The notes: a model not told the origin generated them from the sequence alone. Counted from the stretch's first letter, positions 8,377-63,864 are shown. The stretch: DNA of 64,000 nucleotides from Macrostomum lignano (GCA_002269645.1 NIVC01001551.1:205279-269278), one strand, 5' to 3'. Translations and numbers: made by a program.

Positions 8377-9864
8377 CTAGCAGGCCGGCTGCTTGTGGCC
8401 GCCAAACCTTAGCGGGCTGGATGCCGCCGCAGCCAGCAGGTGCAGCTTGCTGGCTGCCGACAACGGCGACCAGAGGCGGCGCAAGCGGTCCTGACAGGCC
8501 GGCGCCCGCTGCTGCTTAGCGACCAGGCCGGACTGGCGCAGGGCGCGGAGGCTGTCGCGCGGCGACCGGCGCGCCCGACGATGCCGGGATAGCGACAGAG
8601 GCGGCGGCGGCTGCTGCTGCTGCTGCTGCGACGCCGGCGGCGGTGGAGTGGCGACTCTCGAAGGCAGCGCCGCGGCCGACTGGGCAAAGCGAAGCGCCTT
8701 CAGCGGCGCCGGCTGGAGCAGCTTTGTCGATGTCGTCGTCGAAGTCTCCGACTGCGGCGGGGTCGGCGCTGGCATCGGCTGAAGCTTCTTTCGGCCGCCG
8801 ATCAGCGGCGTCCGCGCCGGGTCGAACCGGGCGAAAGTGGCGCCTCCTTCAACGTCGCCAGATGGAGCCGCCGCCGCCGCTGCTGATGCCGCCGCTGCCG
8901 TCGTTGCTCCGAGGGGGCTGCGGCTGCGGCTGCGACTCGCCAGGCGGGAGACGGCGCGGCCGAAAGCGGCGCGCAGCGCGCTGCCCAACGAAGCGGCGCG
9001 CTGCATGCTGCGCTGCTTTCGTTCCTGCTGTTGCTGCTGAGGATGAAGCTCCGATTGTCCAGCCTCCTCGGCCTCTTCTTCCTCATCGCAGCCGTACTCA
9101 ACAGCGTCGCTAGCGGCAACTCCGACGCAGTCGCCGAATTCAACCAGCAGGGCGGCCAGGCGGGCGGAGCGGGCGGCCTCGGTCGGGGTGGCGGCGCCGC
9201 CGGTCAGACAGGGCCCGAGGCAGACGGCCAGGTTGCCGGCGCTCATCCGGTTGACGTCGGATGCGGCGGCGACACGGCTGAGGAAGCCGCACAGGAGGCG
9301 CAGCGAGTGCAGCTGGCGGAGCGGCAGCAGGAGGCTGGCCAGGCGGAGCGCGCGGACCCGGCGCTGAAGGCCGAGAGCGTCGGGCAGCAGGGCGGCCTCC
9401 GCCAGCCAGGCGGGCGCCAGTGGCTCCGGCAGCTCTCGCAGCCAGGCCTTCAGCACGGCGCTGACGTCGTGAGCCGGGGAGCCGTCGCGAATGCCGCAGC
9501 CCCGGTCCAGACGCAGGCGGAGGTCGCGCTGGCGGAGCCGGGAGCCTTCGAGGCGGAACAGGCCCTCGCAGCGGAGCCGGTCCTCGGCTGACAAGTAGCG
9601 GCAGCAGGCGGCGAGCACAGCGGGCACCTGGCCGATGCCTTCGACCATCGAGCTCGGCTGGTCCTCCAGACGTCGCCCGAAGCACCGGCTGGCGGCGGCA
9701 GGCGGCGGTGGCGGTGGCGGCAGCTGGCGTCGGCGCCAGTCCAGGCGCAGGCCAAATTGTCGTCGGAGCTCGCGCTCGGCGCCGCCCATCGCCCGCCGTC
9801 GGGACTCCGGCGACATCTGGCCGATGTAGTGCTGGCTGCTGGACTCAACAGTTTGCAGTGGCAT
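8377..9864 (-). CDS. RhoGAP-domain protein, ARHGAP11-like, single exon, 495 aa
   Basis: RhoGAP motifs: FG..L, VP.VL..C, EGLFR (arginine finger), DVSAVLKAWLRELPEPL, NRMSAGNLAVCLGPCL. The N-terminal ELRRQFGLRL and the GIGQVP / DRG.G segments resemble ARHGAP11A. Low-complexity C-terminus. Confidence 0.85.
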   Translation of the reverse strand: MPLQTVESSSQHYIGQMSPESRRRAMGGAERELRRQFGLRLDWRRRQLPPPPPPPAAASRCFGRRLEDQPSSMVEGIGQVPAVLAACCRYLSAEDRLRCEGLFRLEGSRLRQRDLRLRLDRGCGIRDGSPAHDVSAVLKAWLRELPEPLAPAWLAEAALLPDALGLQRRVRALRLASLLLPLRQLHSLRLLCGFLSRVAAASDVNRMSAGNLAVCLGPCLTGGAATPTEAARSARLAALLVEFGDCVGVAASDAVEYGCDEEEEAEEAGQSELHPQQQQQERKQRSMQRAASLGSALRAAFGRAVSRLASRSRSRSPLGATTAAAASAAAAAAPSGDVEGGATFARFDPARTPLIGGRKKLQPMPAPTPPQSETSTTTSTKLLQPAPLKALRFAQSAAALPSRVATPPPPASQQQQQQPPPPLSLSRHRRARRSPRDSLRALRQSGLVAKQQRAPACQDRLRRLWSPLSAASKLHLLAAAASSPLRFGGHKQPAC

Positions 9865-16107: not shown

Positions 16108-16990
<883 letters not shown>

Positions 16991-17569
16991 AGGCACAGAC
17001 AACTGACTCTTGATCGATCACGTGCTCATTGTAATAAAGAGTCCCCCAGCCTGAACGGGCAAGCAGTTTTTGCGCAGGAGAAACACCAGCATGCCCAAGT
17101 ATCACTCAGCCCAATTCGAAATTGGCCACGACCTGTGTGTACAAAATTGAGGTCGGCCACCGATGCAAGCTGGAGAGCCGGAGCCTCATCAAGTGGCCCG
17201 GTATGGCTAATCATATTATTAGCTGTATACTAAAAACATTGTTGACTGACGGGCGGCGAAATGACGGATCTGTTTGCTCAGGCCGAGCCTTTAACTCGAT
17301 ATTTTTTTAACTGAAATGTTGTGGTCTCTGATTAGCGATTAGCATAAGCACACGCTGGTTCATTGAGAACAATTGATTAGCACAATAGAGTGAAACGACT
17401 GCTCGATTGAAGCTTTTTATTTTTTGCGCTTTGTTCTGATGCAACTGCTTTTAGAAATGCTTTTTTAAGAGGGACTTCAAGTTGCTTCACTTTGGAATTG
17501 TTCGACCTTGTTCGAATTGTTCGATCATAAAAATCTTCTATACACTAAAAATCGATTGCTTCTTGGTTT

Positions 17570-18460
17570 CAAATGGCAGTGTGTGGGTTTCTAATGGCGG
17601 TGTGTGGGTTTCTAATGGCGGTGTGTGGGTTTCTAGTGGCGGTGTGTGGGTTTCTAGTGGCGGTGTGTGGGTTTCTAGTGGCGGTGTGTGGGTTTCTTGT
17701 GGCAGTGTGTGGGTTTCTAATGGCAGTGTGTGGGTTTCTAGTGGCGGTGTGTGGGTTTCTTGTGGCAGTGTGTGGGTTTCTAATGGCAGTGTGTGGGTTT
17801 CTTGTGGCAGTGTGTGGGTTTCTAATGGCAGTGTGTGGGTTTCAAATGGCAGTGTGTGGGTTTCAAATGGCGGTGTGTGGGTTTCTAATGGCGGTGTGTG
17901 GGTTTCTAATGGCAGTGTGTGGGTTTCAAATGGCGGTGTGTGGGTTTCTAATGGCGGTGTGTGGGTTTCTAATGGCGGTGTGTGGGTTTCTAATGGCAGT
18001 GTGTGGGTTTCTAATGGCAGTGTGTGGGTTTCTAATGGCGGTGTGTGGGTTTCTAATGGCGGTGTGTGGGTTTCTAATGGCAGTGTGTGGGTTTCTAATG
18101 GCGGTGTGTGGGTTTATTGTGGCAGTGTGTGGATTTCTAATGGCAGTGTGTGGGTTACTAATGGCAGTGTGTGGGTTTCTTGTGGCGGTGTGTGGGTTTC
18201 AAATGGCAGTGTGTGGGTTTCAAATGGCGGTGTGTGGGTTTCTAATGGCAGTGTGTGGGTTTCTAATGGCAGTGTGTGGGTTTCTAATGGCAGTGTGTGG
18301 GTTTCTAATGGCAGTGTGTGGGTTTCTAATGGCACTGTGTGTGGGTTTCTAATGGCATAGTTAGGGTTTATAATGGTTTTGTTTGGGTTTCTATTGGCAT
18401 TGTGTGGGTTTCTAATGGTGGTTTGTATGTTTCTAATGGTTTGTGGGTTTCTAATTGCAG
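17570..18460. repeat. 21-bp minisatellite (gtgtgtgggtttctaatggca)
   Basis: Tandem array that decays towards the 3' end. Confidence 0.95.
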
Positions 18461-18885
18461 TGTGTGTGGGTTCTATTATACAATGTGTTGGTTATATATT
18501 ACAGTGTGTGGGTTCTATATTACAGTGTACTTAGGCTTTCAAGATTTAAACAACCTTTTGCCGAATTAAATCTTACTTTGTTACTAGCAGTAGTGCTTAA
18601 AAAGTATCTTTGGTATCATAAAAAACATGATTTAAAATGCCAAAATAAAAAAATTAATTCCATATGGAATTCGACAAAAATCCAGTTCAAATTTTTAGTG
18701 TCAGGTGGTTAATGATCTCTTTAACTTTTTTTTCACACAGGGACACAAATTTTTGTTATACTTGCAAGTCGATTATAAAAAAATTTATTTGAAAAAATCG
18801 TGACGAATTCGGTAACAGACGTAGCGGAGGAACTTTGTTTTACTTAGGTGGAGACGAGTTTTTTCCGGTGTTTTCAAATCGCATC

Positions 18886-18922
18886 TATATAAGTCTGACT
18901 GGAAAGTCTCTCAGACTTAGTT
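18886..18922 (+). promoter_or_regulatory. Putative core promoter of secreted gene A: TATA box plus initiator-like element
   Basis: TATATAAG at 18886-18893 and TTAGTT about 30 nt downstream at 18917-18922, about 50 nt before the ATG at 18974. Confidence 0.55.
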
Positions 18923-18973: not shown

Positions 18974-19657
18974 ATGGCTTCTCCAACCCGATCTCTTCTA
19001 CTGCAGTGTCTGCTGCTTGTCTGTCTGCTCAGCTTTGCCACCTCAGCTGCTTTGGACGCTTTGCCTGCTCAAAACGGGGCGCCGAAAGCGACTGAGGAAA
19101 CTACCGCTTTGCCGGAGGAAACTACCGCTTTGCCGGAGGAAACTACCGCTTCGCCGGAGGAAACTACCGCTTCGCCGGAGGAAACTACCGCTTCGCCGGA
19201 GGAAACTACCGCTTCGACAGAGGAAACTACCGCTTCGCCGGAGGAAACTACCGCTTCGACAGAGGAAACTACCGCTTCGCCGGAGGAAACTACCGCTTCG
19301 CCGGAGGAAACTACCGCTTCGCCGGAGGAAACTACCGCTTCACCAGAGGAAACTACCGCTTTGCCGGAGGAAACTACCGCTTCACCGGAGGAAACTACCG
19401 CTTCGCCGGAGGAAACTACCGCTTCGCCAGAGGAAACTACCACTCCGCCACCGGAAACTACCACCGAGCAAAACAAACCGAACCGACATAAATGGCATGG
19501 AAAAGAGCCCAGGCGCGTCGGCTGGCGCCATCATCATGGCCCGCCGCCTGCCAAGGGAAGGAAGGAGCCTCCGCACCATTCGCGAGAGGAGCGTTATGAC
19601 CGCAGTGACCGCTTTGACCGCTTTCATCGCAATGAGCTTTTCTCATTCGAAACATAA
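18974..19657 (+). CDS. Secreted protein A: signal peptide, about 17 acidic EETTASP heptads, His/Arg-rich C-terminus; 227 aa, unknown family
   Basis: ATG start; Leu-rich signal peptide (MASPTRSLLLQCLLLVCLLSFATSA); unique sequence on both sides of the repeat in the same frame; upstream TATA; AATAAA at 19789-19794. Confidence 0.8.
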   Translation: MASPTRSLLLQCLLLVCLLSFATSAALDALPAQNGAPKATEETTALPEETTALPEETTASPEETTASPEETTASPEETTASTEETTASPEETTASTEETTASPEETTASPEETTASPEETTASPEETTALPEETTASPEETTASPEETTASPEETTTPPPETTTEQNKPNRHKWHGKEPRRVGWRHHHGPPPAKGRKEPPHHSREERYDRSDRFDRFHRNELFSFET

Positions 19658-19998
19658 GAAGCAGCAATTCTTCCAAGGAGGTCCATCCGAGAGACAAAAT
19701 GCAGAGATGCAGTTCAAAGGTGTTCACTGCTCAGTGACTATATAGATATCGATCAGCTATTATTTTGGTGTTGGGATCATTATTGCTAAATAAAATTTGC
19801 CTACGTGTGTCCAGTCTGAGGCTTGGGAGTTTGAGAGATATTGAGTTAAATGTAGATTCATTTATTCCTATAGAATTTCTTTCTTTCGTCTTTTCTTCGT
19901 TAATAAAGGAAACGACAGAAGTAGATATCTCAGGTGTAGAGTAGATAGCTCAGGTGTAAAGTAAATAGCTCAGGTGTGTGTAGAGTAGATTATAGTAG

Positions 19999-21063
19999 AT
20001 TACACCACAGAGAACTACACCACAGAGGACTACACCACAGAGGACTACACCACATGAAACTACACCACATGAAACTACACCACATGAAACTACACCACAT
20101 GATACTACACCACATGATACTACACCACATGAAACTACACCACATGAAACTACACCACATGAAACTACACCACATGAAACTACACCACATGAAACTACAC
20201 CACATGAAACTACACCACATGAAACTACACCACATGAAACTACACCACATGAAACTACACCACATGAAACTACACCACATGAAACTACACCACATGAAAC
20301 TACACCACATGAAACTACACCACATGAAACTACACCACATGAAACTACACCACATGAAACTACACCACAGAGGACTAAACCACATGAAACTACACCACAT
20401 GAAACTACACCACATGAAACTACACCACATGATACTACACCACATGAAACTACACCACATGAAACTACACCACATGATACTACACCACATGAAACTACAC
20501 CACATGATACTAGACCACATGAAACTACACCACATGAAACTACACCACATGAAACTACACCACATGAAACTACACCACAGAGGACTAAACCACATGAAAC
20601 TACACCACATGAAACTACACCACATGAAACTACACCACATGAAACTACACCACATGAAACTACACCACATGAAACTACACCACAGAGGACTAAACCACAT
20701 GAAACTACACCACAGAGGACTAAACCACATGAAACTACACCACATGAAACTACACCACATGAAACTACACCACATGAAACTACACCACATGAAACTACAC
20801 CACATGAAACTACACCACATGAAACTACACCACATGAAACTACACCACAGAGGACTACACCACAGAGGACTACGCCTTCAGTTCGTCATTTCGTCGATCG
20901 GCATCGCCACCGACGCTGTCGCCGTCGCCGTGGCAAGCAATGTCGCAAGCATCTGTTTCATGAACTCAGCCTCGGCAAAGGCCGCTATGGTTACGGAGGC
21001 GGCCGCAAGCGGTTTGAGAAATCGGACGAAACTATCGAACACGATTGGGATGAAGGAGTTTAA
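19999..21063 (+). CDS. Putative 5'-partial protein B (not in ORF track): about 58 ETTPH pentapeptides, then a His/Arg/Cys-containing basic segment and an acidic tail
   Basis: The frame is stop-free from 19999 to TAA at 21061-21063. Manual translation ends ...[64 protein letters not shown]. No in-frame ATG or signal peptide found. Confidence 0.55.
20000..20875. repeat. 15-bp tandem repeat (catgaaactacacca), probably coding (ETTPH)
   Basis: About 58 units; variants read [15 protein letters not shown] in the +1 frame. Confidence 0.95.
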
Positions 21064-22058
21064 ATGCTAACTCGATTTGACAGATTGAGGATGGTTTTGC
21101 TTCGCTCGAATCGCTTCGCTTCGCTGCACCAGCTTAGTGACAAAGTGACCAGACATGAACGCGACCCCGTGTTACATTGTTAGTGGACGTTGTTTCATTT
21201 TTAAGGCTGCAAGAGACCGGAAGTCTGGTGCACAGATACTAGAATAACTATAGATGGGGCCACTCAACACATTTGCGCCCAACCTACTTTTAGTTCAGTA
21301 TTCTCGTAGTACGAGCTAAGTTAAACTGAAGTATTTAATGTACTTTTAAAGACAAGGCTCATTTATTGGCTTTTAACCCCCCCCCCCGCCCCAGCTTAAA
21401 CCCTCAAACAGAACCTCTACCCCTGCCCCGCCACCCAATTTTTATTGCCTTCCCTGATTGTTCCAGCCTAAAGCTGCCATGTACATTTCAGTGGACTGGC
21501 TAATGTACATTATTGCTGAACCAATTAGCAAGCTGTTTACGCCTGCAAGCTTGGGCTTCTAAACTTATCAAAGTCATTTCAGCCGCTTTTATTTTTCAAA
21601 ATGCCATCTGTATTCTTCATTGCTACTGTACTGAAAGTAGAAAGCCGTTTTGCTAAGTATACATGCCTGAGTGGCCTACCCCCTTATCAAATCCGAGGCG
21701 AAAAAATCGATTAGCATTTTAATTTCGGTAAATGTGCATTCAATTCAAACAAAACTTTTCGTAAACTGAATTATGGAGCCAGATGCAGGGAGACATTACA
21801 GAGAAATCAAAGGTATCCAGTGTGCCAATGAAGAAATGAAATGTTTTTGCAGGCTTAATTTAATTCATAGTTTTTGAAGCAACGAACCAAAAAATCAATA
21901 AAACTTCGAAACCTTCTTACTAGCAAAATCTAATATATTAGACACAGTAGAACTCATAACTGATTTTGCATAGAAAAATAAAGGGTTCAACGCAAAGTTA
22001 CACCAAGATCGATTATGTCAATGTAAAAGGCATTGATGCATTCTAAAGACACCAAGTG

Positions 22059-23150
22059 TTAGTCATGTCGGTGACGAGGGCTGTAATCAGGACGCCGGTA
22101 ATGTTGACGGCGTGATCTGTAATCAGGGCTTCGTTCGTGATGTCGGTGACGAGATCTGTAATCAGGGCTTCGTTCGTGATGTCGGTGCCGATATCTGTAA
22201 TCAGGGCTTCGTTCGTGATGTCGGTGACCAGATCTGTAATCAGGGCTTCGTTCGTGATGTCGGTGACCAGATCTGTACTCAGGGCTTCGTTCGTGATGTC
22301 GGTGACCAGATCTGTACTCAGGGCGTTGGTAATGTCGTCGACGTGATCTGTACTCAGGGCGTTGGTAATGTCGTCGACGTGATCTGTACTCAGGGCGTTG
22401 GTAATGTCGGCGACGAGATCTGTACTCAGGGCGTTGGTAATGTCGGCGACGAGATCTGTGGTCAGTATGACGGAATTCGACCTGAGGTATTTTATCACTT
22501 TTATTGTTTTTATTCGTATGATCCATGTCGTATGTCTTTGTTTGAGCTAATTGCTTAGCTATGACTTCAGAAGGTCGAATAATGGTCTTTTCTGGTGGCC
22601 GTGCAGCAGCAGCTGGTGGAGCAGTGGCTTCGGCTGGTAGAGCAGGGGCTTTAGCTGGCAGAGCAGGGGCTTTAGCTGGCAGAGCAGGGGCTTTAGCTGG
22701 CAGAGCAGGGGCTTTAGCTGGCAGAGCAGGGGCTTTAGCTGGCAGAGCAGGGGCTTTAGCTGGCAGAGCAGGGGCCTTAGCTGGCAGAGCAGGGGCTTTA
22801 GCTGGCAGAGCAGGGGCCTCAGCTGGCAGAGCAGGGGCCTTAGCTGGCAGAGCAGGGGCTTTAGCTGGCAGAGCAGGGGCTTTAGCTGGCAGAGCAGGGG
22901 CCTCAGCTGGGCGATGCACATTCTTGTTGGCTGAAGCTGCTGAAATCACAGTGCGATTATTTACAAGCACGTGGAGCTGTTTAGCTGGTTTAACATGTTG
23001 TTGTAAACCATTTGCTGCGTTGCGGATGTCAGAACCATCACCAGCTAAGCCGGAGATCCTACTTAACGGAGCCGAGTTGACACAGCTGGCAATGCACAGG
23101 ATGATAAGAAAAACACACAGGTGAGGTCTCTGCAGGACAGTCTGCGCCAT
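22059..23150 (-). CDS. Secreted protein C: signal peptide, about 13 APALPAK heptads, Arg/His/Tyr-rich 12-13-aa repeats; 363 aa, unknown family
   Basis: ATG start; signal peptide (MAQTVLQRPHLCVFLIILCIASCVNS); two distinct repeat blocks joined in frame by unique sequence; TAA at 22059-22061. Confidence 0.8.
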   Translation of the reverse strand: MAQTVLQRPHLCVFLIILCIASCVNSAPLSRISGLAGDGSDIRNAANGLQQHVKPAKQLHVLVNNRTVISAASANKNVHRPAEAPALPAKAPALPAKAPALPAKAPALPAEAPALPAKAPALPAKAPALPAKAPALPAKAPALPAKAPALPAKAPALPAKAPALPAKAPALPAEATAPPAAAARPPEKTIIRPSEVIAKQLAQTKTYDMDHTNKNNKSDKIPQVEFRHTDHRSRRRHYQRPEYRSRRRHYQRPEYRSRRRHYQRPEYRSRRRHYQRPEYRSGHRHHERSPEYRSGHRHHERSPDYRSGHRHHERSPDYRYRHRHHERSPDYRSRHRHHERSPDYRSRRQHYRRPDYSPRHRHD

Positions 23151-23618
23151 GCTGTTTTGGTTTCAACTTTTTTGTGTCGGAAAGAAGTTGTTTTTAGCGC
23201 ACTTGTGAGCTGTGTTTTAAAACCTGTTTTTGTCTTGCCAAAATGGTTCAACGAAAGCTTTTAATTCGTGTCCCGATGGCACACAATGTCACGCAAACTA
23301 GCCATAAAATTTATTGTAGCTTGAGTCTGAAATTCGCATAACCAGCTGTGAATTCATTTCTCATTGCTTTCCCTTTCAACAAAGTTTTTTGAAACTTTTC
23401 TCTGTTTGTTTCACCTCTGCAAAGCTATGATTACTGCACTTGCGTCACGTTCAGATTCCGGAGGTCGTTGCAAAAATCACCTGTTCGGCAATGAAAAATC
23501 CAAAGCAAAATCTTAACCTAAAAATAAAAACCTGACGAATTCCAGCCGGCTCAGCATTGTCAAAGTTTTAATTGCAAGAGAGCTTTGTCAGCATTTGAAA
23601 CTGTTTAACATCGAAAAG

Positions 23619-24611
23619 ATGAGATTTTTAAAGACAATTTCGTCCGTTTTACTGCTGAGTGTCGCAGCAGCAGCAGCTGCTGCTGTTGCAATCGACAGTG
23701 CATTTGACGATATCAGCAGCCAGTGGACGGCTGACTCAGGATCGGCATCAAGGTGGGACGAAGACTTCGAGAAAGAATTCAGCAATCGTTTTGGAATCTC
23801 TCGACCGAGGCGCTCGGACTCAGTGGAAAAGAGCGACGAGTTTAGGGTTGGAAAAGGGGCAGAGAAAAGGCCCGGCTTTAAAAATTGGAAGTTTGATGGC
23901 GAGACATCACGAAAGCGACGTCGCGAACACGGCAGACGCGAAGAAGAACGTCGCGAACACGGCAGACGCGGAGAGGGACGTCGCGAACACGGCAGACGCG
24001 GAGAGGGACGTCGCGAACACGGCAGACGCGGAAAAGGACATCGCCAACACGACAGACGTGGAAAAGAACGTCGCGAACACGGCAGACGCAGAAAAGGACG
24101 TCGCGAACATGACAGACGTGGAAAGGGACGTCGCGAACGCAGCAGACGAGGAGAGGGACGTCGCGAACATGACAGACGTGGAAAGGGACGTCGCGAACGC
24201 AGCAGACGAGGAGAGGGACGTCGCGAACATGACAGACGTGGAAAGGGACGTCGCGAACACGGAAGACGCGGAGAGGGACGTCGCGAACATGACAGACGCG
24301 AAGAGGAACGTCGCGAACACGGAAGACGCGGAAAGGGACGTCGCGAACACGGCAGACGCGGAGAGGGACGTCGCGAACGCGGCAGACGTGGAAAGGGACG
24401 TCGCGAACGCGGCAGACGCAGAAAAGGACGTCGCGAACACGGCAGACGTGGCGAGGGACGTCGCGAACTCGAAAGACGTGGAAAGGGACGTCGCGGACAT
24501 GAAGACCGATATAGACACTACAGGCATGGAAACAGACATAATAAGCAGGGTCGATTTAAACCGGGCAAGAGACGCAATGGGCACAGAGAGGATTCAAGAA
24601 CTCGCGAGTGA
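23619..24611 (+). CDS. Secreted protein D: signal peptide, acidic pro-region, RKRR site, about 19 RREHGRRGEG decapeptides; 330 aa, unknown family
   Basis: True ATG at 23619 ([24 protein letters not shown]). Repeat variation includes synonymous changes in this frame (cgc/cgt/cga, cac/cat). AATAAA at 24737-24742. Confidence 0.8.
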   Translation: MRFLKTISSVLLLSVAAAAAAAVAIDSAFDDISSQWTADSGSASRWDEDFEKEFSNRFGISRPRRSDSVEKSDEFRVGKGAEKRPGFKNWKFDGETSRKRRREHGRREEERREHGRRGEGRREHGRRGEGRREHGRRGKGHRQHDRRGKERREHGRRRKGRREHDRRGKGRRERSRRGEGRREHDRRGKGRRERSRRGEGRREHDRRGKGRREHGRRGEGRREHDRREEERREHGRRGKGRREHGRRGEGRRERGRRGKGRRERGRRRKGRREHGRRGEGRRELERRGKGRRGHEDRYRHYRHGNRHNKQGRFKPGKRRNGHREDSRTRE

Positions 24612-24944
24612 ATGAATCTTGCGAAGGGCTCCGAAGTCAGTGACTTCTACAGGCCCACAATAGAGTTGAGTTTATGACACAATGATTTCGCAGGTGAAAG
24701 GGTGAACTTTTAAATTTAGCTAATGTTTTATCAAATAATAAACGGAATGTTGACAAATCGATTTTAAATCTTTGATTCATCATCAGAACGATTATAAGAG
24801 CTATATACTCGTGTATATTAACACTAGCACGGTTACCAAAGCAATAAGAGACAAATGAGAATGAACGATCAAAAGCGGATCACAGACAAGCATTAATTGT
24901 ATTGGAGCAGCCAGTTCAATTCGAGTGCCAGTTAAAAGCTCGGA

Positions 24945-33535
<8,591 letters not shown>

Positions 33536-34526
33536 TTGCCACGTACATGAATTTAATCGGAATTGATTTTTAATTTTTTTATCTTAAATAAGTATTCATT
33601 TGCGATTTAATATACCATATTGAATAAGCTTATTAAAACGAATAGGTAATAAATAATACAGATGTTCTCAATAAATATAATTTTTTAATAAGCCTTTAAA
33701 GAAGTTTTTGTATCAAAGTGCTAGTTAGATTTTTGGGATTTCTAGAATTGTTGGATATTAAAATATAAATTAATTATCACACAATAGCTATGAACCTCAT
33801 TTTATGCGAATCAAAAGATTTTTAACTAGCATAAAAAACTCTGACAGTATGAACAACATAATATAAAACTTTGAATCACTATGCCAAATTGAGAATTAGT
33901 AAATTTTTACTTTGCCTTTATTTCTACAATGTGTTATGCCTAGCAGGTAAGCAGGATGATAGATATGTTGTTTGATATTATTGGTTAATCAAAATGTTTT
34001 TTGTAAAGAATGAAAGCTGGCGAAAAATAATTTTCTTTTTCTAAAATATTCTAATAAATGCAACATTAATTCATTATAAAATATATTTGAATTTATAAGT
34101 GCATGTATGCATCAACAATGCATTGTTGTGCTTTGTACAAATAGTTAAAGAAATTTTCACTAATACACTATCATTAAACGTATCGTTCATTAGTTGCTAT
34201 TCCATTTCAGAGAAATAATAAGTATGATTATGATATGAAGTATGAACTGATATATTAAAACTAGCTACGCTCGTATATTGAAATTTAATAACATCCGATG
34301 ACTCAAACTGAACATGTGTCGTTTGCAATAGATTCAGATGAACGGGGAATAATCTTTACTTATGAATACGACGTAATCTTTTAAAAAACCTGAACTTTTA
34401 TTTAGAAAACAATATAAATATATTACTTTTTGTAGATTCGGAATTTTTGTTTTATTTTTCTTCGGTGTAGCGTTTCAGCAATCAGCGTTTCAGCAATCGG
34501 AGCTTTTGTTTCAAGTCACTTATGAA

Positions 34527-36904: not shown

Positions 36905-37047
36905 CGGACAGACAGGCAGACAGGCAGACAGACAGGCAGACCGACACAGTCAGACAGACACTAAGACAAACAGACAGACACTAAGACAGACAGACAGACA
37001 CAGACAGACAGACACTGAGACAGACACTAAGACAGACACTAAAACAG

Positions 37048-37082
<35 letters not shown>

Positions 37083-37101
37083 GACAGGCAGACAGACAGA
37101 A

Positions 37102-37144
<43 letters not shown>

Positions 37145-37145
37145 A

Positions 37146-37202
<57 letters not shown>

Positions 37203-37300
37203 GGCAGGCAGACAGACAGACAGACAGACAGACAGGCAGACAGACAGACAGACAGGCAGACAGACAGACAGACAGGCAGACAGACAGACAGACAGACAGG
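36905..37300. repeat. (GACA)n-type microsatellite downstream of frizzled
   Basis: Directly visible. Confidence 0.95.
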
Positions 37301-37337
37301 CAGGAGCCGCAGGGATGGTCAGTCAGGGGCGCAGCTG

Positions 37338-40300
37338 TCAGACGTGAGACATCTGGTTGCCAGCCGACTGCGGCAGCAGCGGCAGCGGCGGCTGCCCCGG
37401 GGCCTGGCTGAACTTGTAGTGCGACCGCGGGTCCCCAGTCAGGCTGACAGCAGCAGCCGACGCCGCCGCCTGCGCCTGCGCCGCAGCGCCGCCGTCAAGG
37501 ACGAAGTGATGACCGCCAGCTGATGGGCGGCTGTAGGCTCCGCCGCCGCCACCGCCGCCACCGCCGCCGCCGCAGCCGGTGCAGCAGAACAGGCGGCCAA
37601 GAAACTGACGCCAGGTGTGCAGAGTCTTGCCGGACCAGACCCACACCCCGCTGGTGATGCCAACGGCCAGCTGCATGAACTGGCGCAGCATGAACACGCC
37701 GTACTCCGGCTCCGCGGCGGGCTTCTCCCCCGGGCAGCGGCAGGCCTTGTCCTGCAGCCAGCGCTCACGCATCTGCGACTCGTAGAAATGGCAGGCGATG
37801 ACCACGGAGGCTGGCAGGGTGTACAGGATGGAGAAGATCCCGATGCGGATCATCAGCTTCTCCAGCTTGTAGGTCTTGGCGCTGGCCTGCTGCTTGATGA
37901 CCGACCGGATGCGGAACAGGGCCACGAAGCCGGTGAGCAGGAAGACGCTGCCGATGAGCAGGTAGGTAACCAGGGGCAGCAGCACGAACAGGCGCATGGC
38001 GGTGAGGTTCGTGTTGCCAACAGAGCAGATTCCGGAGATCGGGTCGCCGTCAACTAGGGAGAAGGTCAGGACCAGGATGAACTTCACGATTGGCAGCACC
38101 CAGGCGATGCAGTGGAACACCTGCGGCGGGAGGTGGGAGTGGAGCTTTGAGTAATCGATATTTTTTACTGAATATTATTGATTTGTCAACTGCAAGGTAA
38201 AAAAATATTTATTACTACTTTGTGCGAATTTTTGAGAATAGAAAACTGCCTATCATTTGCCCGCTCCTCTCCTCTCCTCTCCTCTCCTCTCCTCTCCTCT
38301 CCTCTCCTCTCCTCTCCTCTCCTCTCCTCTCCTCTCCTCTCCTCTCCTCTCCTCTCCTCTCCTCTCCTCTCCTCTCCTCTCCTCTCCTCTCCTCTCCTCT
38401 CCTCTCCTCTCCTCTCCTCTCCTCTCCTCTCCTCTCCTCTCCTCTCCTCTCCTCTCCTCTCCTCTCCTCTCCTCTCCTCTCCTCTCCTCTCCTCTCCTCT
38501 CCTCTCCTCTCCTCTCCTCTCCTCTCCTCTCCTCTCCTCTCCTCTCCTCTCCTCTCCTCTCCTCTCCTCTCCTCTCCTCTCCTCTCCTCTCCTCTCCTCT
38601 CCTCTCCTCTCCTCTCCTCTCCTCTCCTCTCCTCCTCTCCTCTCCTCTCCTCTCCTCTCCTCTCCTCTCCTCTCCTCTCCTCTCCTCTCCATCTCCATCC
38701 CATCCCATCCCATCCCATCCATCCCATCTCATCCCATCCCATCCCATCCCATCCCATCCCATCCATCCATCCCATCTCATCCCATCCCATCCCATCCCAT
38801 CCCATCCCATCCATCCCATCCCATCTCATCCCATCCCATCCCATCCCATCCCATCCCATCCCATCCCATCCCATCCCATCCCATCCATCCCATCCCAACC
38901 CATCCCATCCCATCCCATCCCATCCCATCCATCCCATCCCATCCATCCCATCCCATCCCATCCCATCCCATCCCCCATCCCATCCCATCCCATCCCATCC
39001 CATCCCATCCCATCCCATCCCATCCCAACCCATCCCATCCCATCCCATCTCCTAATTCCAAGCCAAAGCATCGCCAAGCGCAGCCGCAGCGCTGCAGTCT
39101 CACCTCGCTGTACTTGGCGATGGCCTCGCTGCCCCACTTGAGCCCGGCCGCCAGGAACCAGGCCACGCACAGCATGACCCACCACACGCAGCTGGCCATG
39201 CCGAACAGGTAGGTCAGCAGGAACACCACGGTGCACAGCCACGGTCCAGACGATCCGTAGCGCAGCACCCGACCGTCGCAGGCGATGGTCTGCGGTCCCA
39301 CGGCCAGGCGGACAATGTAACCAGCTGACACCATGACGTAACAGGCAGACAGCATCACAATGGGCCGCTCTGGATAGTTGAACCGCTTAGAGTTAATTAG
39401 AAAGGTGAGCACAGTAACGGTGGAACTGACGGCGCACAATATCGACCACATGCCGATCCAGACGCTCGCGAACTGCCGGTCACGATCCTTCTCGGAGAAG
39501 AACAGCCCCTCGCAGGGCATGGCGCAGTTCGGTAGGCCGGCAGTGTACACCTTGTTGTAGTGTGCCTCGTTCTCCGTCAGCTGCACCAGCGGCGCCTGGC
39601 AGTGGCACTCGCAGGAGGCCGGCGCCGAGCCGTATGAGGTGTCCGTGTCTGGTGGCAGCGTGGTGACCGGCTGCGAGGTACTCGTGTGGTTGACGTCCAT
39701 GCACAGCGTGTCAGGATCGCCGTAGTCTGCGGTGGAGAGACAGGACACTGTTGGGGTGGTGCTGCCTTACTGCTGTTGGGTCATGGTTATCCCCGGTGGG
39801 TCAGGGTTCTGTCCAATGGGTCAGGGTTCTCTCCAATGGGTCATGGTTATCACCGGCGGGTCAGGGTTCTCTCCAATGGGTCATGGCTATCACCGGTGGG
39901 TCAGGGTTCCTTCCAATGGGTCATGGTTATCACCGGCGGGTCAGGGTTCTCTCCAATGGGTCATGGCTATCACCGGTGGGTCAGGGTTCCTTCCAATGGG
40001 TCATGGTTATCACCGGCGGGTCACGGTTCTCCCCAATGGGTCATGGTTATCACCGGCGGGTCAGGGTTCTCTCCAATGGGTCATGGTTATCACCGGCGGG
40101 TCAGGGTTCTCTCCAATGGGTCATGGCTATCACCGGTGGGTCAGGGTTCCTTCCAATGGGTCATGGTTATCACCGGCGGGTCAGGGTTCTCTCCAATGGG
40201 TCATGGCTATCACCGGTGGGTCAGGGTTCCTTCCAATGGGTCATGGTTATCACCGGCGGGTCACGGTTCTCCCCAATGGGTCATGGTTATCACCGGCGGG

Positions 40301-43300
40301 TCAGGGTTCTCTCCAATGGGTCATGGTTATCACTAATGGGTCAGGGTTCTCTCCAATGGGTCATGGTTATCACCAATGGGTCAGGGTTCTGTCCAATGGG
40401 TCAGGGTTCTCTCCAATGGGTCATGGTTATCACCAATGGGTCAGGGTTCTGTCCAATGGGTCAGGGTTCTCTCCAATGGGTCATGGTTATCACTAATGGG
40501 TCAGGGTTCTCTCCAATGGGTCATGATTATCACCGGCGGGTCAGGGTTCTCTCCAATGGGTCATGGTTATCACCAATGGGTCAGGGTTCTGTCCAATGGG
40601 TCAGGGTTCTCTCCAATGGGTCATGGTTATCACCAATGGGTCAGGATTCTCTCCAATGGGTCAGGGTTCTCTCCAATGGGTCATGGTTGTCACCAATGGG
40701 TCAGGGTTCTCTCCAATGGGTCATGGTTATCACCAATGGGTCAGGGTTCTCTCCAATGGGTCATGGTTATCACCGGCGGGTTGGGGTTCTCTCCAATGGG
40801 TCATGGTTATCACCGGCGGGTCAGGGTTCTCTCCAATGGGTCAGGGTTCTCTCCAATGGGTCATGGTTATCACCAATGGGTCAGGGTTCTCTCCAATGGG
40901 TCAGGGTTCTCACCGGCGGGTCAGGATTCTCTCCAATGGGTTAGGGTTCTCTCCAATGGGTCAGGGTTCTCTCCAATGGGTCATGGTTATCACCGGCGGG
41001 TCAGGGTTCTCTCCAATGGGTCATGGTTATCACCGGCGGGTCAGGATTCTCTCCAATGGGTCAGGGTTCTCTCCAATGGGTCATGGTTATCACCAATGGG
41101 TCAGGGTTTTCTCCAATGGATCATGGTTATCACCGGCGGGTCAGGGTTCTCTCCAATGGGTCAGGGTTCTCTCCAATGGGTCAGGGTTCTCTTCAATGGG
41201 TCAGGGTTCTCACCGGCGGGTCAGGATTCTCTCCAATGGGTCATGGTTATCACCGGCGGGTCAGGGTTCTCTCCAATGGGTCAGGGTTCTCTCCAATGGG
41301 TCATGGTTATCACCAATGGGTCAGGATTCTCTCCAATGGGTCATGGTTATCACCAATGGGTCAGGATTCTCTCCAATGGGTCATGGTTATCACCAATGGG
41401 TCAGGGTTCTCTCCAATGGGTCATGGTTATCACCGGCGGGTCAGGGTTCTCTCCAATGGGTCATGGTTATCACCGGCGGGTTGGGGTTCTCTTCAATGGG
41501 TCAGGCTTATGTCTAGTTAAGTCAAAGACCTTTCCAATGGATCAAGATTTGCGTAAAAAGGTCGAGTTTTATTCTCAGTGGCTGATAGAATCAAGTTAGT
41601 CACAGATGAGTAATCTCGAACAACCTCCCCTCCCTATAAAAGGTCTGTAAAAGTGAAGCTCAAAAATTTCCCATTCAGAAGGAGAGTCAGGCTGAAAGCT
41701 CCCAGAGACTTGGCTGGTGGAGTACCTGCTGCGGAGGCTTGGGGTGCCTCTAAAAAACTACTCTTTCTATTTTTGTATCTCAATGGGCCGATGCGACCCC
41801 ATTGTGCCGGCTCAAAGCTAAGAGGAAAGGGGAAGTGGCTGCCGCTGTGGACTCGGCATTTTTTACTTTTTTTAAAAGAAACTCATTTTTTCTTGCCCGA
41901 TGAGGACAATGCAAGCGTTTTGCTGTGTCGGCGACAAAAAATTCTTGGGATGATGCGCTGCCTACCTATTCTCCCTCTTCAGCTCCTCCAGTTGGTCCCT
42001 TCTTGAAAAAGAAGGCACAATGGGGCCTGCAGCTTATTTATTCATTTCAAAGCGGCAAAGAGGTGGGACCGGCTGGCCGGGTGGCTGCGGACATCAATAG
42101 ACGTGTTGCCGACGGAATGAAATATGAAATTTTTGTTTCCAGAAATTTCCCTCACCATCTCTATTCTATACTTGTATGCTAATGAGAGAGCGGCATGCCA
42201 AAAACCTTTGTCTCCTTGCTTGTTATGTCTGCTGTAGCTAAACATAGACTTATTGGTAGATAGATCTGACCAATTGGTAGATAGATCTGACCAATTGGTA
42301 GATAGATTTGACCAATCGGTAGATAGATCTGCTCAATCGGTAGATAGATCTGTTAAATCGGTAGATAGATCTGCTCAATCGGTAGGTAGATCTGCTCAAT
42401 CGGTAGGTAGATCTGCTCAATCGGTAGGTAGATCTCACCTGGCAGTTTAGAGCAGTCCATCTTTTCTGGCCAGCTGAACCCGTACTGTCGCATCAGCGGC
42501 GCGCAGCCCTTCTTGGCGCGCAGGCAGACGGAGCGGCAGGCCGGCAGGTGCCTGTCGTAGTTGTGCATGCAGATTGGCACGTACATGCTGCAGAGGAAAA
42601 AGCGCAGGTCCTGGCTGCACGAGATTTCCACCAGCGGCCAGAACTGATGCACCTGCAAAGAGGAGAGCGAGTTGAAGTGCAGGGGGTTAAAAGTCTAGCT
42701 AAAATTAATAGGGAGAATAATCCATATTGTTCATTTGTCCATCAAAACTTCAGGATGTTCAGGAATCATTACAGTAGTTCAGGAATCATTACAGTAGTTC
42801 AGGAATCATTACAGTAGTTCAGGAATCATTACAGTAGTTCAGGAATCATTACAGTAGTTCAGGAATCATTACTGTAGTTTAGGAATCATTACAGTAGTTC
42901 AGGAATCATTACTGTAGTTCAGGAATCATTACAGTAGTTCAGGAATCATTACTGTAGTTTAGGAATCATTACTGTAGTTTAGGAATCATTACAGTAGTTC
43001 AGGAATCATTACTGTAGTTTAGGAATCATTACTGTAGTTTAGGAATCATTACTGTAGTTTAGGAATCATTACTGTAGTTCAGGAATCATTACAGTAGTTC
43101 AGGAATCATTACAGTAGTTCAGGAATCATTACAGTAGTTCAGGAATCATTACAGTAGTTCAGGAATCATTACAGTAGTTCAGGAATCATTACTGTAGTTC
43201 AGGAATCATTACTGTAGTTCAGGAATCATTACTGTAGTTCAGGAATCATTACAGTAGTTCAGGAATCATTACTGTAGTTCAGGAATCATTACTGTAGTTC

Positions 43301-63520: not shown

Positions 63521-63864
63521 GGGGTCGCCATCATAAGCTCGAAAAATCACATCGTCGAAAAGTTCAGCAAACATCATCACAATCTCGAAAAGGCACAAGC
63601 TCTAACCCTAACCCTAAGGCACCAGTACCCTAGCCTAACCCTAAACCCTAACCCTAAGGCACAAGTTCTAACCCCAACCCTAAACTTAACCCTAAGCCCT
63701 AACCCTAAGCCACAAGTTCTAACCCAACCCTAAACTTAACCCTAAACCCTAACCCTAAGGCACAAGTTCTAACCCTAACCCTATTCGAGATTGTGATGGT
63801 GGTTGCTAGACTTTTCGACGATATGTTTTTCGAGCTTGACTTTTCGAGCTTGTGTGAGGCCCCC
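63521..63864. mobile_element. Non-autonomous TIR element (MITE) with a telomere-like (CCCTAA)-rich core and 8-9-bp TSD
   Basis: About 55-bp imperfect inverted repeats at 63535-63589 and 63784-63837. GGGG/CCCC termini. Direct repeat cctcgcta(g) at 63513-63520/21 and 63865-63872/73. Core of degenerate aaccct repeats. Confidence 0.75.

What the first reader, a model, noticed from the sequence alone, without database searches (positions are those of the whole stretch)
18974..24611. Compact cluster of four orphan, repeat-built, His/Arg-rich (mostly secreted) proteins: candidate gland-secretion system
Seen: within 5.6 kb, between satellite DNA and the conserved DUF4551 gene, lie four reading frames with one shared design: signal peptide (A, C, D; missing in B), a Pro/Thr- or acid-rich repeat spacer, and a strongly basic His/Arg-rich C-terminal region. 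A: EETTASP x~17 then RHKWHGKEPRR..RHHHG. B: ETTPH x~58 then [12 protein letters not shown]: APALPAK x~13 then RSRRRHYQRPEY / RSGHRHHERSPDY repeats. D: acidic pro-piece then RREHGRRGEG x~19. None resembles a family I recognise. Established knowledge: flatworm adhesive proteins include a Lys/Arg-rich secreted component (Mlig-ap1), trematode eggshell precursors are His/Tyr-rich, and cationic defence peptides are often made with acidic pro-pieces. Inference: a co-regulated, fast-evolving locus for a secreted material or defence function (adhesive, rhabdite, eggshell, seminal or antimicrobial). This is the best candidate here for an undescribed system.
Basis: partly seen in the sequence, partly recalled or inferred. 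Interest (0 to 1): 0.8.

Follow-up and report, generated by a model that had tools for sequence, protein, structure and literature searches.

The report
Flatworm cluster of secreted repeat-protein genes
In a minisatellite-packed stretch of the Macrostomum lignano flatworm genome, two already-annotated genes, one probable gene and one likely non-gene encode signal-peptide-led, disordered, highly charged repeat proteins with no detectable relatives; they are probably lineage-specific secretory material, a common kind of gene, and their function is untested.

Summary
All four reading frames, their repeat units and their copy numbers are at the stated coordinates. The window is Macrostomum lignano contig NIVC01001551.1. 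C (22059-23150, minus) and D (23619-24611, plus) are already annotated in GenBank's RNA-seq-derived gene set. They lie head-to-head, 468 bp apart. A (18974-19657) looks like a gene, with a TATA box, a good start context, a signal peptide and an AATAAA signal, but it is not annotated. B has no start codon, no signal peptide, no poly(A) signal and no annotation. It is most likely a plain minisatellite or a truncated relic related to A.

No true homologue turned up in Pfam, the PDB or two very large protein collections. Every match fell on low-complexity repeats. Those collections do not appear to hold flatworm proteomes, so "orphan" is not proven.

The proteins are predicted to be disordered. 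Mature A is a polyanion (net -29, mucin-like), while C and D are strong polycations (+43, +63).

My best reading is lineage-restricted secreted repeat proteins built from coding minisatellites, acting as charge-driven granule or extracellular material. Nothing here supports a co-regulated "system", a particular gland or a specific function. This is a new member of a known kind, of modest interest.

The parts
17565..18475 (.). Flanking non-genic 21-bp minisatellite (43 copies). It is open in several frames but not annotated. It serves as an internal control showing that a triplet-period array alone yields long ORFs here.
   Evidence: no gene called there
18886..18893 (+). TATATAAG box 81-88 bp upstream of the gene A start codon. 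There is no upstream ATG in between.
18974..19657 (+). Gene A (probable, not annotated), 227 aa. Layout: signal-peptide-like start, (EETTASP)17 acidic Pro/Thr/Ser repeat at 19094-19462, then a 62-aa basic His/Arg tail. Start context is A at -3 and G at +4.
19789..19794 (+). AATAAA poly(A) signal 132 nt after the gene A stop codon. A second one lies at 19902-19907.
19999..21063 (+). Frame B: (ETTPH)~58 from a 15-bp minisatellite (20001-20864) plus a 64-codon basic tail. It has no ATG in this frame, no signal peptide, no AATAAA or ATTAAA within 400 nt and no annotation. A second frame (HHMKL, 19949-21070) is equally open. It is most likely non-genic or a 5'-truncated relic related to A.
22059..23150 (-). 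Gene C (annotated in GenBank), 363 aa. Layout: signal peptide (cleavage predicted after about residue 26), a unique 57-aa piece, (APALPAK)13 at 22611-22910, a unique 57-aa linker, then (RSRRRHYQRPEY)4 and (RSGHRHHERSPDY)5 at 22058-22459. Mature protein net +43 with 28 His. Predicted disordered.
23151..23618 (.). 468-bp head-to-head intergenic region between the C and D start codons, a possible shared bidirectional promoter. A/T-rich boxes lie at 23215-23222 (C side) and 23519-23530 (D side).
   Evidence: The promoter function is inferred.
23619..24611 (+). Gene D, 330 aa from its ATG. GenBank annotates it as a 5'-open 363-aa CDS starting at 23520. Layout: signal peptide, a 73-aa acidic piece (pI 4.9) ending in an RKRR site, 19 x RREHGRRGEG-type units (23917-24499), then a His/Arg/Tyr tail. 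Mature protein net +63.
24737..24742 (+). AATAAA poly(A) signal 126 nt after the gene D stop codon.
24945..33538 (-). Neighbouring conserved DUF4551 gene (multi-exon, 680 aa), convergent with D. It is not part of the cluster and marks its right-hand boundary.

Best explanation
This is a small cluster of lineage-restricted, single-exon genes of Macrostomum lignano. They encode secreted, intrinsically disordered repeat proteins whose repeat domains are coding minisatellites.

Shown: C and D are transcript-supported genes arranged head-to-head. Each has a signal-peptide-like start and a frame that runs through unique sequence as well as arrays.

Probable: A is a third such gene, an acidic mucin-like protein (Pro/Thr/Ser/Glu repeats) with a short basic tail.

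Probable: B is not an intact gene. It is either a minisatellite or a 5'-truncated relative of A.

Inferred origin: the arrays arose through the same slippage and unequal-crossover process that fills the rest of the window with 19-21-bp minisatellites. Only triplet-compatible unit lengths (15, 21, 30, 36 and 39 bp) are seen inside the reading frames.

Inferred mechanism: after entry into the ER and removal of the signal peptide, the products act as bulk secretory or extracellular material through charge rather than fold. A would be a glycosylated, possibly phosphorylated polyanion (net -29, 15 S-x-E/D sites). C and D are polycations (+43, +63) with regularly spaced His and Tyr. Such opposite charges favour electrostatic condensation in granules. 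His gives a pH or metal switch on release into seawater. The Tyr, His and Lys of C could allow cross-linking. The gland and the biological role are not determined.
For: - **Identity and annotation.** The window is identical to NIVC01001551.1. That record's annotation derives from RNA-seq transcripts plus TransDecoder. It contains C and D but none of the neighbouring satellite ORFs, so it discriminates.
- **Open unique sequence.** P is about 3e-5 for D and 3e-4 to 8e-4 for C.
- **One frame through two arrays.** A single frame in C joins two unrelated arrays and two unique segments. The unit length changes from 36 to 39 bp, which preserves the frame.
- **Synonymous variation in C.** Of the repeat-unit variants in C's first two arrays, 5 of 6 are synonymous in the annotated frame, against about 0.28 expected. 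In the third array (C2b) 1 of 4 is, so 6 of 10 over all three.
- **Signal-peptide-like starts.** Seen in A, C and D. Residues 9-26 are the only confident helix in the C model.
- **Start and end signals.** A at -3 for all three start codons and no upstream ATGs. TATATAAG lies upstream of A. AATAAA lies 132 nt (A) and 126 nt (D) after the stop.
- **Disorder and charge.**; C has mean pLDDT 47.6.
- **Repeat periods.** All 5 arrays inside the frames have triplet periods, against 10 of 39 elsewhere in the window (Fisher P = 0.003).
- **No folded domain or family.**
Against: - A and B are absent from the transcript-based annotation.
- A codon-usage likelihood trained on five conserved ORFs of the window does not favour the proposed frame for the unique parts of A, C or D (about 0, against +0.26 to +0.58 for the training genes). 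The training set is small (1,769 codons) and more GC-rich.
- Synonymous versus non-synonymous counts in A, D and B are uninformative.
- The period test is post hoc. A run-length permutation gives P = 0.024, and only 0.29 if a small 3-copy 20-bp array between A and B is counted.
- My signal-peptide rule is permissive: 17% of ATG-ORFs pass.
- No protein-level, expression or cross-species evidence was obtainable.
- The charge-condensation mechanism rests on composition alone.
Confidence: 0.5

Rival explanations
1. By-products of a minisatellite-rich genome. The frames are open only because the arrays have triplet periods. C and D are low-level or read-through transcripts on which TransDecoder called the longest ORF, and no functional protein is made.
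For: Tandem and simple repeats make up about 15% of this genome, and the window holds about 44 arrays. A neighbouring 21-bp satellite gives 259-292-aa ORFs. Two intronic arrays read in frame with a DUF4551 exon for 674 codons. Codon usage gives no support for the frames. No homologues were found. A and B are not annotated.
Against: The unique, non-repeat parts of C and D are open far beyond chance. All three start with a signal-peptide-like segment at the first ATG in a good context. C shows an excess of synonymous variants. The annotation did not call ORFs on the other satellites nearby.
Confidence: 0.2
2. Reproductive-tract secretions specifically. These would be seminal-fluid (prostate) proteins, or eggshell or cement-gland precursors. 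C's regularly spaced Tyr together with His and Lys would serve as a substrate for quinone tanning, as in trematode eggshell proteins.
For: In M. lignano, 76 prostate-limited transcripts were found, 31 of them with no BLAST hit and 38 of the 65 with an identifiable reading frame carrying a signal peptide. Small orphan secreted proteins are therefore typical of that tissue. The basic domain of C is 12% aromatic (mostly Tyr), 17% His and 33% Arg, and the APALPAK domain adds 11 Lys. That trematode eggshell precursors are Tyr/His/Lys-rich is established knowledge, cited here from memory.
Against: There are no expression data for these loci. I could not link them to any published transcript or probe. 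D and A have almost no Tyr in their repeats. No tyrosinase or other pathway gene lies in the window.
Confidence: 0.12
3. Host-defence precursors. The signal peptide and acidic pro-piece would be removed at the RKRR site of D (and the RSRR sites of C), releasing cationic His/Arg-rich antimicrobial or metal-binding peptides resembling histatins.
For: D has the layout signal peptide, 73-aa acidic piece (pI 4.9), R-K-R-R, then a polycationic region. The His/Arg/Tyr/Lys composition of the tails resembles that of human histatins (from memory).
Against: Within D, RR pairs recur every 5 residues. Dibasic processing would therefore leave tripeptides and remove the charge. There is no amphipathic or Cys-stabilised motif, no homology to any antimicrobial peptide family, and 0 Cys in the mature proteins.
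Confidence: 0.07
4. Intracellular Arg-rich proteins (RS/RE/RG-type nuclear or RNA-binding low-complexity proteins). On this view the hydrophobic N-termini are not functional signal peptides.
For: RSRRRH, RSPDY and RREHGRRGEG resemble the Arg/Ser- and Arg/Glu-rich low-complexity tails of splicing-related proteins (from memory). My signal-peptide rule has a high false-positive rate.
Against: All three have canonical positive n-regions, 14-18-residue hydrophobic cores and small residues at -3 and -1. No RRM or other nuclear domain is present. A carries a mucin-type Pro/Thr/Ser repeat, which makes sense only in the secretory pathway.
Confidence: 0.04

Closest known systems
Lineage-specific 'orphan' mucins and the mammalian SCPP saliva/milk gene cluster (MUC7, Muc10, histatins, statherin, proline-rich proteins), as in Pajic et al. 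2022, PMC9417175
   Same: A compact cluster of small secreted, disordered, fast-evolving proteins with exonic tandem repeats. Mucin-like function is gained by adding Pro/Thr/Ser repeats to a secreted protein. His-rich cationic members sit next to acidic S-x-E-rich members. Family membership is defined by function, not descent. A meets the compositional criteria: 29% Thr+Ser overall and 42% in the repeat, with Pro/Thr/Ser confined to the repeats.
   Different: There is no sequence homology and the phylum is different. No shared exon structure exists: these are single-exon genes, whereas SCPP genes share a conserved signal-peptide exon. Glycosylation, phosphorylation and tissue are all untested.
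Macrostomum lignano adhesive protein Mlig-ap1 (Wunderer et al. 2019, PMC6410801)
   Same: Same species. It is secreted and extremely cationic, with repeat-rich basic regions, and it had no homologues at the time of description. Its function depends on charge interactions with polyanions.
   Different: Mlig-ap1 is a very large protein whose Lys/Arg-rich regions alone exceed 3,600 aa, and it carries C-type lectin, vWD/C8 and TIL domains. C and D are 330-363 aa, Arg/His-rich rather than Lys/Arg-rich, and have no domains.
Drosophila salivary glue (Sgs) genes (from memory)
   Same: Clustered, partly divergently transcribed small genes. They encode a signal peptide, Thr/Pro-rich tandem repeats and a short distinct C-terminus. 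Repeat copy number evolves rapidly, and the products are packed in secretory granules.
   Different: Sgs C-termini are Cys-rich, whereas the mature proteins here have no Cys. There is no homology and expression here is unknown.
Oppositely charged cement proteins of the sandcastle worm, and His-rich squid-beak or Nereis-jaw proteins (from memory)
   Same: Secreted disordered polyanions (phospho-Ser-rich) paired with His/Arg/Lys/Tyr/Gly-rich polycations. These condense by complex coacervation and set through a pH change, metals or Tyr/His cross-links. The charge pattern matches that of A versus C and D.
   Different: The resemblance is purely compositional. No co-expression, phosphorylation or DOPA evidence exists, and the repeat motifs differ.
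Trematode eggshell precursor proteins (vitelline protein B, p48; from memory)
   Same: Flatworm secreted proteins rich in Tyr, His and basic residues. The C-terminal domain of C is 17% His and 12% aromatic, mostly Tyr.
   Different: Those proteins are Gly/Lys/Asp-rich and are made in vitellocytes, which Macrostomum lacks as a separate organ. C is Arg-dominated. A and D lack Tyr in their repeats. Homology was not testable here.

Membership tests
Mucin (functional class; criteria of Pajic et al. 2022), applied to A | Thr+Ser richness above 20% of the peptide | tested here: met
   Mature A is 29% Ser+Thr and its repeat domain is 42%. The B repeat is 40%.
Mucin (functional class), applied to A | Pro/Thr/Ser-rich sequence clustered within exonic tandem repeats | tested here: met
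   17 x EETTASP, a 21-bp unit with 93% matches and 0% indels, inside the ORF.
Mucin (functional class), applied to A | Secretion (signal peptide) | tested here: inconclusive
   The n/h/c-region heuristic is positive, but the rule is permissive (17% of ORFs pass) and SignalP was not available.
Mucin (functional class), applied to A | More than 4% predicted or actual O-glycosylation sites; expression as a glycoprotein | not testable with these tools
   No O-glycosylation predictor or expression data were available. A is absent from the transcript-based annotation.
Mlig-ap1-type flatworm adhesive protein | Very large protein with Lys/Arg-rich regions plus C-type lectin, vWD/C8 and TIL domains | tested here: not met
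   The proteins are 227-363 aa, have no Pfam domain, and are Arg/His-rich with only 0-6% Lys in the basic regions.
Neuropeptide or prohormone precursor, applied to D | Signal peptide plus repeated bioactive peptides of at least about 4-5 residues flanked by dibasic sites, often with a Gly amidation donor | tested here: not met
   RR pairs recur every 5 residues, so the intervening pieces are EHG and GEG tripeptides.
SR/RS-domain nuclear proteins, applied to C and D | An RNA-binding or other nuclear domain plus an RS-dipeptide-rich region, with no signal peptide | tested here: not met
   No RRM or other domain is present, and the N-termini look like signal peptides.
Histatin-like His-rich cationic peptides | Short (about 24-38 aa) His-rich cationic secreted peptides, with descent from SCPP genes | tested here: not met
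   Only the composition resembles histatins. No Pfam or PDB match was found, and the phylum and gene structure differ. Activity is not testable here.
Non-coding minisatellite, applied to B | A tandem array with no start codon, targeting signal, poly(A) signal or transcript annotation; more than one frame open only because of the unit length | tested here: met
   The ETTPH frame has no ATG and the HHMKL frame is equally open. No AATAAA or ATTAAA lies within 400 nt. It is not annotated. Caveat: its unit aligns with the A unit in the same frame at 11 of 15 positions (P about 0.01), so a decayed paralogue remains possible.
Taxonomically restricted (orphan) gene | No homologue outside a narrow lineage | tested here: inconclusive
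   No true hits were found in Pfam, the PDB, the 5.8-billion-cluster collection or the 1.84-billion representative set. Those collections do not return even C itself, and no other Macrostomum data could be searched.

The most novel reading that the evidence does not exclude
The locus encodes a matched polyanion and polycation set for a charge-switched secretion. In the sharpest version, A (acidic, heavily O-glycosylated, protein-poor per unit mass) would be the unidentified negatively charged releasing factor of the M. lignano duo-gland adhesive organ, or part of it. Wunderer et al. proposed a *small* negatively charged molecule as that factor, which a 202-aa glycoprotein fits only loosely, and they described the releasing vesicles as PAS-positive and poor in protein. 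C and D would be cationic partners in the same or an opposing gland. A broader version is that coding minisatellites in this repeat-rich genome act as a routine birth mechanism for new secreted materials.
Probability: 0.04. Interest if true: 0.7.

Novelty: new member of a known kind. Interest (0 to 1): 0.3.

Why it matters
If C, D and perhaps A are translated, they are a compact example of how a minisatellite-rich genome turns slippage-prone DNA into new secreted, charge-patterned materials. The nearest parallel is the way mammals repeatedly invented mucins and salivary proteins. M. lignano is a transgenic model used to study temporary bioadhesion, seminal-fluid biology and regeneration. The negatively charged releasing factor of its adhesive organs is still unidentified, and many of its gland-specific transcripts are orphans. 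A short head-to-head promoter driving two secreted polycations could also serve as a tool if it proves gland-specific. Without expression data, however, these are two uncharacterised hypothetical proteins plus two unannotated frames, which is a common sight in flatworm genomes.

Tried and rejected
- **Homology searches with A and C.** Only low-complexity hits appeared, mostly unnamed entries from environmental and other public sources (the few named ones bacterial) on the Glu/Thr or Ala/Pro repeats.
- **Chimeric query.** I joined only the non-repeat parts of A-D to escape the low-complexity hits. It returned zero hits even at E <= 10. C itself is not in that collection, so the search is uninformative for flatworms.
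- **Exhaustive HMMER search with C.** It gave 888 hits. Of the 150 listed, 149 fell on residues about 13-231, centred on the APALPAK array (82-172), and one fell on the basic repeats. All are compositional.
- **PDB search.** RPB1 CTD heptads and chemoreceptor coiled coils matched by 7-residue periodicity only, so I rejected them as homology.
- **Pfam.** Nothing reached the cut-off.
- **Paralogy among A-D.** No similarity was found in flanks or unique parts. The satellite at 17565 compared with the A unit is at chance level.
- **Codon-usage frame test.** Inconclusive.
- **Synonymous versus non-synonymous counts within arrays.** Informative only for C.
- **Transcript evidence from Logan RNA-seq assemblies.** I predicted the k=31 unitig-edge partial products of A and D and looked them up. 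They are not on record.
- **Second genomic copy.** Exact look-ups of C and D found a single contig only.
- **Link to published in situ screens.** No primer or sequence tables are held, and repeat motifs are absent from the full-text library.
- **Splicing A to B, or finding an upstream signal-peptide exon for B.** I found no plausible donor or ATG by eye.
- **Rfam and tRNA scans of the window.** Nothing found.

Full report
**Where the window comes from.** An exact-product look-up of frame C placed it on GenBank contig NIVC01001551.1 of assembly GCA_002269645.1. The fetched locus is base-for-base identical to window 12059-33150. NIVC01 is the Mlig_3_7 assembly of the flatworm Macrostomum lignano. 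Window 1-64000 corresponds to contig positions 205,279-269,278, so the window ends at the contig end. More than half of that genome is repetitive, and simple and tandem repeats make up 15% of it. The window reflects this: Tandem Repeats Finder reports 87 rows, about 44 distinct arrays. Conserved genes in the window are:
- an FkbM-type methyltransferase ORF (371-2197, minus)
- a RhoGAP exon (8377-9864, minus)
- the DUF4551 gene (24945-33538, minus)
- a Frizzled gene (about 37338-42586, minus).

**The observation.**
- A (18974-19657, plus): 17 x EETTASP.
- B (frame 19999-21063, plus): about 58 x ETTPH.
- C (22059-23150, minus): 13 x APALPAK, then 4 x RSRRRHYQRPEY and 5 x RSGHRHHERSPDY.
- D (23619-24611, plus): 19 units of the RREHGRRGEG type.

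Two refinements are needed. First, mature A is acidic overall (net -29, pI 4.5), and only its last 62 residues are basic. Second, B's ETTPH frame has no ATG, and a second frame is equally open.

**Are these genes or just open minisatellites?** This is the main question, because in this window any array with a triplet period gives a long ORF. The adjacent 21-bp satellite at 17565-18475 yields ORFs of 259-292 aa. Two intronic arrays read in frame with a DUF4551 exon for 674 codons. Five lines of evidence separate C and D from that background.
1. Both are in the GenBank annotation, while none of the neighbouring satellite ORFs is. [quoted passage not shown] D is annotated as a 5'-open CDS from 23520, one codon after an in-frame stop. 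I infer from this that its transcript starts near 23518.
2. The non-repeat parts of the frames are open far beyond chance: 169 codons in D (P about 3e-5), 134 in C (3e-4 to 8e-4), 111 in A (1e-3 to 1.6e-2), but only 65 in B (0.02-0.07).
3. In C, one frame links two unrelated arrays and two unique segments. The unit grows from 36 to 39 bp, which keeps the frame. Of the unit variants in its first two arrays, 5 of 6 are synonymous, against about 0.28 expected; in the third array (C2b) 1 of 4 is, so 6 of 10 over all three.
4. A, C and D each begin at the first ATG with a positively charged n-region, a 14-18-residue hydrophobic core and small residues at -3 and -1. All three have A at -3 and no upstream ATG. 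A has TATATAAG 81-88 bp upstream. A and D have AATAAA 132 and 126 nt after the stop. C has ATTAAA at +194.
5. All five arrays inside the frames have triplet periods, against 10 of 39 elsewhere (Fisher P = 0.003).

**Caveats on that evidence.** The period test is post hoc. A run-length permutation gives 0.024, or 0.29 if the small 20-bp array between A and B is counted. My signal-peptide rule passes 17% of ATG-ORFs in the window. A codon-usage likelihood trained on five conserved ORFs gives no frame preference for the unique parts of A, C or D. That is expected for young genes and for a small GC-rich training set, but it is not support.

**Verdict per frame.**
- C and D are real transcribed genes (likely).
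- A is gene-like in every sequence feature but is missing from the transcript-based annotation (probable; about even odds that it is expressed).
- B has no start, no signal peptide, no poly(A) signal and no annotation. It is best read as a minisatellite or a truncated relic. Its unit aligns with the A unit on the same strand and in the same frame (SPEETT against TPHETT, 11 of 15 positions, shuffle P about 0.01), so descent from an A-like array is possible.

**Relatives.** Pfam gives nothing above cut-off. Searches of the 5.8-billion-cluster collection with A and C return only low-complexity matches. A chimera of all unique segments returns nothing at E <= 10. An exhaustive HMMER scan of 1.84 billion representatives with C returns 888 hits. 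Of the 150 listed, 149 lie on residues about 13-231, centred on the APALPAK array, and one lies on the basic repeats; inspection shows unrelated Ala/Pro-rich proteins. PDB hits are heptad-periodicity artefacts such as the RPB1 CTD. These collections evidently do not contain M. lignano proteins, since C itself is not found. No other Macrostomum data were searchable. "Orphan" is therefore consistent with the evidence but not demonstrated. The four frames show no detectable similarity to each other in flanks or unique parts. The shared "design" may be convergent rather than inherited.

**What the proteins look like.** All regions fall on the disordered side of the charge-hydropathy boundary. AlphaFold, run on a single sequence, gives C a mean pLDDT of 47.6, and the signal-peptide helix is its only confident element. 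None of the three predicted mature proteins (A, C, D) contains Cys; frame B's tail does.
- A's repeat is 42% Ser+Thr, 14% Pro and 29% Glu (net -36), with 15 S-x-E/D motifs. By the compositional criteria used for lineage-specific mucins, A qualifies, apart from the untestable glycosylation criterion.
- C is net +43 with 28 His. It has Tyr at regular spacing in the basic domain and 11 Lys in the APALPAK domain.
- D is net +63. Its 73-aa acidic piece ends in R-K-R-R. RR pairs then recur every five residues, so classical dibasic processing would leave tripeptides. That argues against a neuropeptide or antimicrobial precursor.

**Most likely mechanism.** C and D, and probably A, enter the secretory pathway and serve as bulk, fold-independent secretory material whose behaviour is set by charge. 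A would be a glycosylated or phosphorylated polyanion, while C and D are His/Arg polycations. This favours electrostatic condensation in granules. His titration (acidic granule against seawater at about pH 8) or metal binding would act as a switch, and the Tyr, His and Lys of C might allow cross-linking. All of this is inference from composition. The arrays themselves are products of the same slippage and unequal-exchange process seen throughout the window. Sixteen of 44 arrays have 19-21-bp units, and D shows a 60-bp higher-order repeat.

**Comparison with the known.** The closest analogues are functional, not evolutionary:
- orphan mucins and the SCPP saliva gene cluster
- Drosophila glue genes
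- oppositely charged marine cement proteins
- Mlig-ap1, in the same species, whose adhesion chemistry depends on polycation-polyanion interactions.

Membership in the Mlig-ap1, neuropeptide, SR-protein and histatin families was tested and not met. Mucin-class criteria are met for A where they could be tested.

**Assessment.** There are two, or perhaps three, secreted repeat-protein genes and not four. There is no evidence for a co-regulated system beyond the 468-bp head-to-head arrangement of C and D, and the function is open. C and D are already deposited as hypothetical proteins. This is a new member of a known kind, of modest interest (0.3). A low-probability but testable upside is that A is the unidentified negatively charged releasing factor of the adhesive organ.

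Noticed in passing
window 63602-63783: (CCCTAA)n telomere-type repeats mixed with a 40-50-bp composite unit, about 220 bp from the end of the contig (window 64000 is the end of NIVC01001551.1). The C-rich strand is on the plus strand at a right-hand end, which is the wrong polarity for a terminal telomere. It is therefore an interstitial or subtelomeric tract, or an assembly-end artefact.
   Followed up: partly
window 28035-30059 (-): A 674-codon open frame. It consists of one genuine DUF4551 exon (Pfam E = 1.2e-9) flanked on both sides by minisatellites (18-bp unit at 28334-28861, 21-bp unit at 29273-29944) that stay in frame with the exon. The annotated product is only 680 aa, so the arrays are presumably intronic. 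Exonisation of such arrays would be an easy route to repeat insertion.
   Followed up: partly
whole window (TRF arrays): Unit lengths cluster strongly at 19-21 bp: 16 of about 44 arrays, with 20 bp occurring nine times. The sequences of these arrays are unrelated. This suggests a length-biased minisatellite-generating process in this genome.
   Followed up: no
window 9043-9591 (+): A 182-aa ORF with a convincing signal-peptide-like start (MKLRLSSLLGLFFLIAAVLNS|VASG) and a Gly/Gln-rich continuation. It lies antisense to the RhoGAP exon in a 60-64% GC stretch. It is probably spurious, and it is a useful reminder of the false-positive rate.
   Followed up: partly
window 38264-39049: Long pentanucleotide arrays, (CTCCT)~87 and (CCATC)~73, sit between the two Frizzled 7TM-coding ORFs (37338-37997 and 38777-39700, minus). 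They lie in an intron and directly abut coding sequence.
   Followed up: no
window 16109-16992, 25622-25840, 26542-27090, 36907-37303: Tetranucleotide arrays of the GACA/ACAG/GGCA type recur at four places. Each is open in several frames (DRQT and CLSV repeats).
   Followed up: no
window 23917-24499: Within gene D, units 7-11 (with unit 12 partly matching) alternate RREHDRRGKG and RRERSRRGEG. This 60-bp higher-order repeat is present about 2.5 times, a sign of recent unequal exchange inside the coding array.
   Followed up: partly
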